A stretch of 61,997 nt of DNA, the filler included, from Platydemus manokwari (lineage: Eukaryota), in the NCBI GenBank assembly GCA_037951405.1. It is 6 parts of 6 records of this genome, joined end to end, with 100 filler letters (N's around TTAATTAATTAA, not from the genome) between each part and the next. Parts side by side here need not be neighbours in the genome. Positions count along the whole stretch, not along the records: positions 10,923 to 20,053 come from JBBMOY011295206.1; 5 more parts are not named here. One strand, 5' to 3'. Both the position numbers and the translations under genes were made by a program. This document shows, one piece after another, positions 12,398 to 14,095 of this stretch. The notes below the pieces were generated by a model. It searched no databases, was not told the origin of the DNA, and worked only from the letters and a program-made list of their open reading frames with translations. Within the stretch, counting starts at the first letter, position 1, and each line of letters begins with the position of its first letter.

Positions 12398-14095
12398 ATG
12401 ATCAATATAATATACTCTGTTTTTATAACAGTTGGGTCAGTATTATTGGTAAATGAATTTCTGAATTGGTTCAAAATTCGTAGAGCCATTAAGAAAAAGG
12501 TTAATGATACAGACGGTAGAAAAATAGGTTTGTTTCAAAAGTTTTGCGGTTTGAAGACTCCTTTAAACAATAAAGAAGTTATATGTCAGTTAACTGGAAG
12601 TGAAATTCATAAAAAGATAAAATCGGAAGATTTGTCCCCGATAGATGTTCTGGAAGCATTTCAAGCTAATGCTATTATTAAAAATAATGAATTCAATTTT
12701 TTGGCAGATATTATCTACGAGGCAGATGTATCATCTCTGGTTATTGATTTGAACTCTAGAAATGAATTAATGGGCTTCCCTCTCGGTATTAGTGATTCAT
12801 TATGTGTCAACAAATACGATTGTACGTTTGGATTAAAAAAAGAGGCTTCCAAGCCATGTTCGAAAGATAGCGTTGTGATAAAAGTTTTACGAGAAAATGG
12901 AGCAATTCCATCGATTATTACAAACGTTTGCCAAGGCGATTTGTTCTCCACTACGAGTAACCCTCTATTTGGACAGACTCTAAATAGCTTGAATACTACA
13001 AGAACGTGCGGTGGTAGCTCTGGTGGATTGGCAGTTGCATTAGCCACATCCTCGGTTGTAATAGGAATAGCCAATGATGCCAATGGAAATATTAGAATAC
13101 CAGCGAGTTTCTGTGGGGTTTTTGGACTCAAAACAACATCGGACCGTATTTCAAAGAGGCATGTAAAAAGTGCTGGATTCAAACAAAACATTATAAAAGA
13201 TTCGATTGGACCAATGGCCAGAAATATCGATGATTTGATTTGTCTATTTAAATCAATGGTTTCCAAACGTATGTTTGAATTGGATCCATTCTGTTGCCCG
13301 ATTCCGTTCAATGAGAATCTATTATCATCGACAAAGAGCCTGAAAATTGGTTATTATGTGCACATTGGCGGCAAATATTTGGAGCCAGTACCAGCTGTTC
13401 AGCGTGCAGTTCTGGCAGCCAAAGATGCTCTGGAGCGAGCTGGTCATCAATTAGTGCCATTTCAATTGCCTGACATGGAACGCATTGTCGATGAGATCTA
13501 CACGAAAATATTTTTCGCCGACGGCGGTCAATCGATTTTGAATATGCTGAAAAATGAACCAAAAGATTCATCGACGAGATTATATCGATTTTTACTGAAC
13601 ACTCCGATTTGTCTGAGACGCTCTGTCGGTTTTGTGGTGGGTTTGTTTTGTAAACGTGCTGGTCGATGGTTGTCGGGATTGGCCGGTGCTTCATCGGTTT
13701 ATGAGGTTTGGAAATTGAATAGCCAAGTGGAAGCGTTTCGAGAAGAAGTGCTCGTATGTTGGGAAAAGGCGAATTTAGACGGATTAATTTGTCCTGTTTT
13801 ACCAATTGCTGCTCCGCCAGTCAAATGTTGCCAATTATTGCTCAATGCCAATCCATATACGATTATTTATAACATTATCGATTTTGTAGCTGGCTCAGTG
13901 CCTGTTACCACGGTTACAAAAGAAGATATTGATAATTTGTCTCAATTATATTCCAATAAATCCGGTTGCTGTCGCAAAATTGCAGAATCACAACGTGATT
14001 CTATAGGCATGCCTGTTGGTGTACAATGCGTTGCGTTGCCATGGCGAGAAGAAACGGGTCTTCGAATAATGAAAAATTTAGTGGATCATTTGTGA
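12398..14095 (+). CDS. Fatty acid amide hydrolase (FAAH)-like amidase-signature protein, intronless, probably catalytically inactive
   Basis: First ATG at 12398 gives 565 aa. N-terminal TM helix, NPLFGQTLN, TCGGSSGG, IRIPASFCGVFGLKT, GPMAR, LKIGYY and GMPVGVQCVALPWREE match FAAH. The catalytic Lys position is Ser and the nucleophile Ser position is Asn. Confidence 0.93.
   Translation: MINIIYSVFITVGSVLLVNEFLNWFKIRRAIKKKVNDTDGRKIGLFQKFCGLKTPLNNKEVICQLTGSEIHKKIKSEDLSPIDVLEAFQANAIIKNNEFNFLADIIYEADVSSLVIDLNSRNELMGFPLGISDSLCVNKYDCTFGLKKEASKPCSKDSVVIKVLRENGAIPSIITNVCQGDLFSTTSNPLFGQTLNSLNTTRTCGGSSGGLAVALATSSVVIGIANDANGNIRIPASFCGVFGLKTTSDRISKRHVKSAGFKQNIIKDSIGPMARNIDDLICLFKSMVSKRMFELDPFCCPIPFNENLLSSTKSLKIGYYVHIGGKYLEPVPAVQRAVLAAKDALERAGHQLVPFQLPDMERIVDEIYTKIFFADGGQSILNMLKNEPKDSSTRLYRFLLNTPICLRRSVGFVVGLFCKRAGRWLSGLAGASSVYEVWKLNSQVEAFREEVLVCWEKANLDGLICPVLPIAAPPVKCCQLLLNANPYTIIYNIIDFVAGSVPVTTVTKEDIDNLSQLYSNKSGCCRKIAESQRDSIGMPVGVQCVALPWREETGLRIMKNLVDHL

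What the first reader, a model, noticed from the sequence alone, without database searches (positions are those of the whole stretch)
12791..13090. Intact FAAH homologue that has lost its catalytic Lys and nucleophilic Ser (pseudo-amidase)
Seen: GFPLGISD aligns to FAAH GVPVSLKE, putting Ser (AGT, 12791-12793) at Lys142. GIANDANGNIR aligns to GLGTDIGGSIR, putting Asn (AAT, 13088-13090) at Ser241 and also altering the oxyanion-hole I-G-G. GGSSGG (cis-Ser217) is retained. Established: amidase-signature enzymes need the Ser-cisSer-Lys triad. The 565-codon frame, TM anchor and C-terminal motifs are intact in DNA where neutral sequence is full of stops. Inference: the gene is under selection for a non-catalytic role, such as N-acylethanolamine binding/carrier or a regulatory heterodimer partner of an active FAAH.
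Basis: partly seen in the sequence, partly recalled or inferred. Interest (0 to 1): 0.75.

Follow-up and report, generated by a model that had tools for sequence, protein, structure and literature searches.

The report
Conserved catalytically dead FAAH1 paralogue
This is an intact, membrane-anchored copy of the lipid-amide-degrading enzyme FAAH that lost two of its three catalytic residues long ago yet has been kept by selection in at least three species beside an active copy, so it most likely now works without cutting anything.

Summary
Window 12398-14095 (+) is an uninterrupted 565-codon FAAH1-type gene (Pfam Amidase E 1.5e-83; rat FAAH E 7e-91). Ser (AGT 12791-12793) stands at Lys142 and Asn (AAT 13088-13090) at Ser241. 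Oxyanion-hole Gly239 is Asn. Ser217 in GGSSGG is kept.

It is not a young pseudogene. Two relatives (59% and 55% identical) share Lys142->Ser and have Asn or Glu at 241. The three form a 100%-supported clade, sister to an active-type clade that keeps all three residues. Dead and active copies co-occur in the same sequencing run, and in one UniParc loading batch, so the duplication and the loss predate the species splits.

Window versus orthologue gives omega about 0.07 with dS saturated; neutrality is rejected (LRT 296). Extra loss of family-conserved positions is confined to the catalytic core (22/50 kept against 38/50 in the active sister). Elsewhere retention is equal (55/90 against 57/90).

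The AF2 model (pLDDT 93) matches rat FAAH at TM-score 0.9. A dead/active heterodimer model passes its controls, but FAAH dimers are already solved, so this shows likeness only.

Best reading: a conserved FAAH1 pseudoenzyme acting as a non-catalytic dimer subunit or lipid-amide binder. Expression, activity and source organism remain untested or unknown.

The parts
12398..14095 (+). Complete intronless CDS of the dead FAAH1 paralogue (565 codons plus TGA stop)
   Evidence: ORF list; Pfam PF01425 E 1.5e-83 over residues 95-565 of the GTG-started ORF; rat FAAH E 7e-91; start confirmed by orthologue P0001; TGA stop
12407..12502 (+). N-terminal membrane anchor (residues 4-22) followed by a polybasic stretch (26-35)
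   Evidence: Best 19-residue Kyte-Doolittle window 1.91 at residue 4, with the same layout in P0001, P0002, P0040 and P0041; long N-terminal helix in the AF2 model
12587..12742 (+). Helical region (rat 76-127), the best-conserved stretch within the dead clade
   Evidence: Identity 62-79% among dead-clade members against 58% in the active pair; it is the only region where the dead pair is not less conserved than the active pair
12791..12793 (+). AGT, Ser at the position of catalytic Lys142
   Evidence: Ser in all three dead-clade members; Lys in the 121 other FAAH1-type sequences
13010..13027 (+). GGSSGG; Ser217 equivalent (AGC 13016-13018) is retained
   Evidence: P0002 has Asn here, so this Ser is not conserved across the dead clade
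13073..13090 (+). NDANGN in place of the T/S-D-I-G-G-S oxyanion hole and nucleophile; AAT 13088-13090 is Asn at Ser241
   Evidence: Position 239 is N/H/Q and position 241 is N/N/E in the dead clade; both are G and S in the active sister clade
13277..13309 (+). ELDPFCCPIPF motif, part of the predicted FAAH-type dimer interface; holds the P297S difference seen in run X1 (13286 C>T)
   Evidence: Interface residues 298-303 of P0001, mapped to the window; variant
13967..13972 (+). Cys-Cys pair invariant in, and specific to, the dead clade; MAFFT places it at rat Trp531/Asp532, where the alignment is uncertain
   Evidence: HMMER places Trp531 two residues further on
14036..14053 (+). LPWREE motif, conserved in dead and active copies and part of the predicted dimer interface
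13631..13861 (+). Segment that has a second, damaged partial copy in run X1
   Evidence: Depth doubles here. The alternative contig carries 9 substitutions, a 3-bp and a 1-bp deletion, and diverges after 13861

Best explanation
The gene encodes a full-length, membrane-anchored FAAH1 paralogue that cannot carry out the Ser-cisSer-Lys amidase reaction. The general base/acid Lys142 is Ser, the nucleophile Ser241 is Asn, and oxyanion-hole Gly239 is Asn. It arose by duplication of the lineage's own FAAH1, possibly as a retrocopy because it has no introns, and lost Lys142 before at least three species diverged. It has been kept under purifying selection beside an active FAAH1 ever since. SHOWN: the substitutions; their sharing by orthologues; paralogy with an active clade; omega far below 1; extra loss of family-conserved positions confined to the catalytic core; a retained membrane anchor; a confidently predicted FAAH fold. 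INFERRED: it is catalytically dead and works through what it has kept, namely ER-type membrane anchoring, the FAAH dimer interface and a remodelled substrate channel. My committed mechanism is a non-catalytic dimer subunit that pairs with the active FAAH1 paralogue, or with itself, at the membrane and so tunes or buffers N-acylethanolamine / fatty-acid-amide turnover instead of hydrolysing these lipids. I put about 0.85 on 'selected, catalytically dead paralogue', about 0.3 on the heterodimer-regulator version, and about 0.25 on a pure binder/carrier version. The 0.55 below is for the statement as a whole.
For: Residues. Lys142 and Ser241 are invariant in 121 other FAAH1-type proteins and replaced only in the window protein, P0001 and P0002. 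The role of the triad and of the Ile238-Gly239-Gly240-Ser241 oxyanion hole is taken from PMC4481349 and PMC8781999. Clade: IQ-TREE LG+C20 gives the dead clade 100/100, its active sister clade 100/98 and both together 100/100. Paralogy: P0001 (dead) and P0041 (active) come from the same run SRR33002330. P0002 (dead) and P0040 (active) carry UniParc ids only 2,436 entries apart. The two subtrees have congruent topology. Selection: window against L001 gives omega 0.067, dN 0.31, dS 4.6 (saturated), and an LRT of 296 against omega = 1. The chance of the open frame is 2e-24. Pattern of change: of positions at least 95% conserved in 118 other FAAH1s, the dead pair keeps 22/50 in the core (rat 128-245) against 38/50 for the active pair (Fisher p = 0.002). 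Outside the core the figures are 55/90 against 57/90 (p = 0.88). Fold: AF2 pLDDT 93.2, pTM 0.93; Foldseek TM-score 0.89-0.93 and rmsd 2.2-2.4 A to rat FAAH over about 542 columns. Dimer: the complex of P0041(92-590) with P0001(70-567) scores 0.86, with the best of 3 controls at 0.00. The mark was reached by 51 of 78 solved complexes and 2 of 108 mismatched pairs. The runs agree in at least 97% of contacts and the partner's pLDDT is at least 84. Positions in that interface are invariant across all six dead and active relatives more often than the rest (16/39 against 96/459, p = 0.008).
Against: No expression data exist for the window gene; the only run holding it is not on record as RNA. No active paralogue has been shown in the window's own genome. 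dS is saturated and the two orthologues differ strongly in GC3. The omega value is therefore only qualitative. The dead clade evolves about 2.5 times faster than the active clade over the same presumed species pair (path 1.16 against 0.46). This fits relaxed as well as changed constraint. The complex pass may come from the model's memory of solved FAAH homodimers, and it cannot tell heterodimer from homodimer or show binding in a cell. Within the dead clade alone, interface positions are not significantly more conserved than the rest (20/39 against 185/459, p = 0.24). Substrate-channel positions are not enriched for conservation either (7 of 20 invariant). SRR33002330 could be a mixed sample. 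Run X1 carries a Pro297Ser difference at a family-invariant residue.
Confidence: 0.55

Rival explanations
1. A lipid-amide binding or sequestering protein: a natural version of what was claimed for FLAT. The dead pocket still takes up N-acylethanolamines or primary fatty-acid amides from the membrane and holds or hands them on, independently of the active enzyme.
For: The whole fold, the membrane anchor and the helix-turn-helix cap region are retained. Several channel positions are invariant within the dead clade but differ from active FAAH1s: Asp at 191, Tyr at 404, Trp at 432, Asn at 491 and the Cys-Cys pair near 531. The core is still as conserved as the rest of the protein within the clade, at 49-65%.
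Against: Channel positions as a set are not more conserved than the protein average (7/20). The membrane-cap region is the least conserved part, at 40-42%. Polar residues replace hydrophobic channel residues. The FLAT precedent is itself disputed (PMC3817039). No coordinates were available to measure a pocket.
Confidence: 0.2
2. A membrane scaffold or receptor unrelated to lipid amides, as in plant Toc64/OM64, where an inactivated amidase-signature domain serves as a protein-interaction module.
For: Toc64 is a membrane protein with an amidase domain whose active-site Ser is Gly and which shows no amidase activity (PMC2174300). The region corresponding to rat 76-127 is the most conserved part of the dead clade. 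It is the only region at least as conserved as in the active pair, which suggests a newly constrained surface.
Against: No added interaction domain is present (Toc64 has TPR repeats). The architecture is exactly that of FAAH1. No partner is known.
Confidence: 0.12
3. Still an enzyme, with a changed mechanism or substrate that uses other residues, such as Ser132, Ser207/Ser208 or the conserved Cys-Cys pair.
For: Ser at the Lys142 position and Ser218 are invariant in the clade. A clade-specific invariant Cys-Cys pair lies near the channel. Omega is low.
Against: No residue is conserved at the nucleophile position (N/N/E). Ser217 is Asn in P0002. Oxyanion Gly239 is N/H/Q. 28 of 50 family-conserved core positions are not kept by both P0001 and P0002. 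From my own knowledge, no amidase-signature enzyme is known to work without the triad.
Confidence: 0.1
4. A decaying or recently inactivated pseudogene whose frame is open by luck.
For: The clade evolves faster than its active sister. A damaged partial copy and a Pro297Ser variant exist in run X1. There is no expression evidence.
Against: The open frame has a chance of 2e-24. Full-length open orthologues at 55-59% identity share the Lys142->Ser change. Omega = 1 is rejected with LRT 296.
Confidence: 0.03

Closest known systems
Fatty-acid amide hydrolase 1 (FAAH1; rat structure 1MT5 and humanised-rat structures)
   Same: Same family and architecture: N-terminal single membrane anchor and an amidase-signature fold. 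Identity is 32-35%, TM-score 0.9 and rmsd 2.2-2.4 A. It nests inside the FAAH1 tree and is predicted to have the same dimer interface.
   Different: Lacks Lys142 (Ser), Ser241 (Asn) and oxyanion Gly239 (Asn). Sixteen further family-conserved core positions are lost relative to its active sister. The gene has no introns; from my own knowledge, vertebrate FAAH has 15 exons.
The lineage's own active FAAH1 clade (P0003, P0040, P0041)
   Same: Sister clade (100/100) at 41-47% identity. It shares lineage-specific features such as the extra residues after the YY motif and the PVLPI.APP segment, and it co-occurs with the dead copy in the same sources.
   Different: Keeps Lys142, Ser217, Ser241 and Gly239/Gly240. 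It evolves about 2.5 times more slowly.
Toc64 / OM64 of plants (inactivated amidase-signature domain)
   Same: A membrane-anchored amidase-signature protein with a replaced active-site serine and no measurable amidase activity, kept for a non-enzymatic role (PMC2174300).
   Different: A different branch of the superfamily (AMI1-like, not FAAH1). Only one triad residue is replaced. It carries C-terminal TPR repeats that provide its receptor function; the window protein has no added domain.
FLAT (FAAH-like anandamide transporter), a truncated FAAH1 splice variant
   Same: Proposed as a catalytically silent FAAH form that binds rather than cleaves anandamide (abstract of PMC3817039).
   Different: FLAT is a splice product of the active gene that keeps the catalytic serine. 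It showed residual activity and its carrier role is disputed. The protein here is a separate, full-length gene with the triad residues replaced in the genome.
Vitamin D3 hydroxylase-associated protein (vertebrate FAAH1-like paralogues)
   Same: Another FAAH1 duplicate retained beside FAAH1 (names).
   Different: All such sequences in the alignment keep Lys142, Ser217 and Ser241.

Membership tests
Amidase-signature superfamily (Pfam PF01425) | Significant full-length match to the Amidase profile | tested here: met
   E 1.5e-83, 281.8 bits against a cutoff of 27, profile positions 1-443 of 445
Amidase-signature superfamily (Pfam PF01425) | Amidase-signature fold | tested here: met
   AF2 pLDDT 93.2; Foldseek probability 1.00 to FAAH, GatA and other amidases
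FAAH1 subfamily | Groups phylogenetically with animal FAAH1 rather than with other amidases | tested here: met
   Inside the FAAH1 group with fungal FAAH-like sequences as outgroup (100/100); best PDB and atlas matches are FAAH1
FAAH1 subfamily | N-terminal single transmembrane anchor | tested here: met
   Hydrophobic residues 4-22 followed by a polybasic stretch; helix in the model
FAAH1 subfamily | FAAH-type homodimer interface | tested here: inconclusive
   The complex model with the active paralogue scores 0.86 against a best control of 0.00, but a like complex is solved, so the pass may be from memory. Interface positions are enriched for six-way invariance, p = 0.008.
Catalytically competent amidase-signature hydrolase | Ser-cisSer-Lys triad (Ser241-Ser217-Lys142) | tested here: not met
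   Lys142->Ser and Ser241->Asn; only Ser217 is kept
Catalytically competent amidase-signature hydrolase | Oxyanion hole Ile238-Gly239-Gly240-Ser241 | tested here: not met
   Ala-Asn-Gly-Asn in the window; position 239 is N/H/Q across the clade. The hole uses backbone amides, so the effect of the Gly239 replacement is inferred.
Catalytically competent amidase-signature hydrolase | Measured amide hydrolysis | not testable with these tools
   Needs recombinant protein and an assay
Pseudoenzyme (dead paralogue kept by selection) | Catalytic residues lost while an active paralogue exists in the same lineage | tested here: met
   An active copy in the window's own genome was not tested.
Pseudoenzyme (dead paralogue kept by selection) | Purifying selection after the loss | tested here: met
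   The shared Lys142->Ser change in three lineages with open frames; omega 0.067; LRT 296 against neutrality; dS saturated
Pseudoenzyme (dead paralogue kept by selection) | Expressed as RNA and protein | not tested
   No RNA run holds the stretch. It is unknown whether L001 is cDNA or genomic.
Toc64/OM64-type inactive amidase receptors | C-terminal TPR repeats joined to an AMI1-like amidase domain | tested here: not met
   Only the Amidase domain is found, and the protein is of FAAH1 descent

The most novel reading that the evidence does not exclude
This is the first natural, full-length FAAH pseudoenzyme. It would be an old, possibly retro-transposed, duplicate of FAAH1 that became an obligate non-catalytic partner of the active enzyme in a poorly sampled invertebrate lineage. 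By heterodimerising or by holding substrate it would set the level of N-acylethanolamine signalling. That would give a genetic test case for the long-disputed idea that catalytically silent FAAH forms act as lipid-amide carriers or regulators.
Probability: 0.3. Interest if true: 0.72.

Novelty: new variant of a known kind. Interest (0 to 1): 0.6.

Why it matters
FAAH is the main terminator of anandamide and N-acylethanolamine signalling and a drug target. Whether non-catalytic FAAH forms have a physiological role has been argued only around FLAT, a disputed splice variant (PMC3817039). Here a separate gene has had Lys142 and Ser241 replaced in the genome. It has nevertheless been conserved across species beside an active paralogue, with relaxation limited to the catalytic core. 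This is the signature of a functional pseudoenzyme. In the amidase-signature superfamily the only precedent I could document is plant Toc64. Full-text searches found no paper linking pseudoenzymes with the amidase signature and none describing a dead FAAH paralogue. If it is expressed, it offers a natural system for asking what an FAAH scaffold does when it cannot hydrolyse: regulate its active twin, buffer lipid amides, or something new. It also gives sequence contrasts that mark which FAAH surfaces matter apart from catalysis: the conserved 76-127 region, the interface motifs and the Cys-Cys pair.

Tried and rejected
- Source organism not identified. No named close relative exists; the best named hits are vertebrate and mollusc FAAH1 at 33-38%. 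The atlas returned only chordate FAAH1 clusters. Run and organism names are coded. The ~50-nt GT-AG introns and the CREC-like neighbour suggest a small AT-rich invertebrate. A rotifer is only a guess from memory and is not used as evidence.
- More clade members were sought three ways: a profile word search (which added only the active P0040 and P0041); a JGI metagenome scan with clade-specific peptides (one unrelated amidase locus, L004); and a search with residues 60-260 alone to catch fragments (only distant amidases). The clade stays at three members. The large representative search was not run, because no claim here rests on absence of relatives.
- Expression: the look-up of sequencing runs gave one non-RNA holder, so expression is open.
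- Rfam and tRNA scans of the piece found nothing.
- Substrate-channel conservation was tested as support for ligand binding and showed no enrichment (7/20 invariant). It is not used as support.
- Interface conservation within the dead clade alone was not significant (p = 0.24).
- Pocket geometry could not be examined, because model coordinates are not exposed.
- Young pseudogene: rejected.
- The downstream EF-hand gene was searched exon by exon by reference.
- One Pfam call failed on a wrong frame and was corrected.

Full report
**What is there.** The piece (10923-20053) is AT-rich eukaryotic DNA: 27% GC overall and 20-24% in the flanks. It holds one long open frame, 12362-14095 on the + strand. 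The first ATG is at 12398, which gives 565 codons and a TGA stop. The start is confirmed by the N-terminus of the closest relative. The protein matches Pfam Amidase end to end (E 1.5e-83) and rat FAAH over residues 64-573 (E 7e-91). A language-model search also returns only FAAH1 clusters. Stop codons make up 9% of codons in the flanks, so the frame is open by chance with probability about 2e-24.

**The observation.** In the HMMER alignment to chain 1mt5_A, chain index plus 36 equals rat numbering; I checked this at Lys142, Ser217, Ser241, Phe381, Asp403, Phe432, Arg486 and Trp531. On that numbering:
- AGT 12791-12793 (Ser132) stands at Lys142.
- AGC 13016-13018 (Ser207, in GGSSGG) stands at Ser217.
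- AAT 13088-13090 (Asn231) stands at Ser241.
- Ile238-Gly239-Gly240 reads Ala-Asn-Gly.

The triad and the oxyanion hole are as described in PMC4481349 and PMC8781999. In a MAFFT alignment of 124 FAAH1-type proteins, Lys142 and Ser241 are invariant in 121. The only exceptions are the window protein and its two nearest relatives. Contigs of one public run cover the gene and agree at these codons. That run may be the source sample.

**Relatives and history.**
- Two proteins are close. P0001 is 59% identical (Logan run SRR33002330, locus L001). P0002 is 55% identical (UniParc UPI00060E0534).
- Both have Ser at position 142. At position 241 they have Asn and Glu respectively. P0002 also has Asn at 217.
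- The next relatives keep all three residues: P0003 (47%, JGI soil or litter sample), and P0040 and P0041 (41-43%).
- A careful IQ-TREE analysis puts the three dead proteins in one clade (100/100). That clade is sister to the three active ones (100/98), and the two together have 100/100 support inside animal FAAH1.
- P0001 and P0041 come from the same run. P0002 and P0040 have UniParc ids 2,436 entries apart. The two subtrees are congruent.
- The simplest history is one duplication of FAAH1 in the ancestor of these species, loss of Lys142 on the stem of one copy (stem length 0.71 against 0.28), and retention of both copies afterwards.

**Selection.**
- A pairwise Goldman-Yang likelihood fit of the window gene against L001 gives dN 0.31, dS 4.6 and omega 0.067. 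The likelihood-ratio statistic against omega = 1 is 296.
- dS is saturated and the two genes differ in GC3 (0.26-0.40 against 0.38-0.71). The number is therefore qualitative, but neutrality is excluded.
- The dead clade does evolve faster. The path between P0001 and P0002 is 1.16, against 0.46 between P0041 and P0040.
- The extra loss is local. I took columns at least 95% conserved in 118 other FAAH1s. In the catalytic core (rat 128-245) the dead pair keeps 22 of 50 and the active pair 38 of 50 (p = 0.002). Outside the core they keep 55 and 57 of 90 (p = 0.88).
- The core is not degenerate within the clade (49-65% identity).
- The region corresponding to rat 76-127 is the best conserved part of the dead proteins (62-79%). 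It is the only region not less conserved than in the active pair.
- Fifty-nine positions are invariant in the dead clade but rare in active FAAH1s. They include Ser142, Asp191, Val223, Ala224, Tyr404, Trp432, Asn491 and a Cys-Cys pair near Trp531.

**Structure and partners.**
- AlphaFold2 with a 107-sequence alignment gives pLDDT 93.2 and pTM 0.93.
- Foldseek matches rat FAAH at TM-score 0.89-0.93 and rmsd 2.2-2.4 A.
The score was 0.86 and the best of 3 controls was 0.00.
- That mark was reached by 51 of 78 solved complexes and 2 of 108 mismatched pairs. The runs agree in at least 97% of contacts, and the partner's pLDDT is at least 84.
- FAAH homodimers are solved, so this shows that the dead copy still looks like a dimer-forming FAAH. 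It does not show that it binds, nor with which partner.
- The predicted interface includes the ELDP..P.PF and LPWREE motifs. Interface positions are invariant across all six relatives more often than the rest (41% against 21%, p = 0.008). The enrichment is not significant within the dead clade alone.

**Interpretation.**
- The gene is best read as a conserved FAAH1 pseudoenzyme. It is membrane-anchored, folded like FAAH, probably dimeric, and unable to perform Ser-cisSer-Lys hydrolysis.
- I favour a non-catalytic dimer subunit that modulates or buffers lipid-amide turnover, either with the active paralogue or as a homodimer.
- A pure binder, a Toc64-like scaffold (PMC2174300) and a changed chemistry remain possible.
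- Decay is effectively excluded.
- The absence of introns in a genome whose neighbouring gene has at least four suggests a retrocopy origin. It is unknown whether the active paralogue has introns.

**Limits.**
- The organism is not identified.
- Expression is untested.
- No active copy has been shown in this genome.
- The clade has only three members despite three further searches.
- No paper in the searchable library describes a dead FAAH paralogue.

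Noticed in passing
window 13631-13861 (run X1 contigs): A second, damaged partial copy of the 3' part of the gene exists in the run. Depth doubles, and the alternative contig has 9 substitutions plus a 3-bp and a 1-bp deletion and diverges after 13861. A 77-nt contig appears to join about 12351 to 13631, but only 27 nt lie on one side. This could be a fragmentary duplicate elsewhere or a deleted allele.
   Followed up: partly
window 13286: The run X1 contig has T where the window has C. 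This is Pro297Ser in the LDP motif, which is invariant in all FAAH1-type sequences aligned and lies in the predicted dimer interface. The only other difference is at 12391, 7 nt upstream of the ATG.
   Followed up: partly
L002 2-103 (JGI 3300030569, active-type P0003): Homologous coding sequence continues upstream of the called start through two adjacent in-frame TAA codons (L002 74-79). They are colinear with Asp-Glu of P0041. This is either a double nonsense change in a transcribed copy or an organism that reads TAA as sense. The gene ends with TGA.
   Followed up: partly
window 17049-19827 (+): A multi-exon gene for a secreted multi-EF-hand protein (CREC/calumenin-like). Exon 1 has a signal peptide and a His/Asp-rich stretch. 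At least four further exons carry EF-hands (Pfam E down to 4.6e-10). Introns are GT-AG and about 45-55 nt, apart from one of about 1.7 kb that holds the N gap. It is cut off by the end of the piece.
   Followed up: partly
window 12398-14095 compared with 17049-19827: The 1.7-kb FAAH-like CDS has no intron, while its neighbour has at least four. This is compatible with a retrocopy origin of the FAAH1 duplicate. The uninterrupted L001 and L003 could be either cDNA or genomic.
   Followed up: no
L001 180-1883: The orthologue shows a steep 5'-to-3' rise in GC3, from 0.38 to 0.71. The co-occurring active gene (L003) shows a milder rise, from 0.35 to 0.59. The window gene stays at 0.26-0.40.
   Followed up: no
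window 19960-20053: AAT/GAT/TAT trinucleotide microsatellite at the edge of the piece.
   Followed up: no
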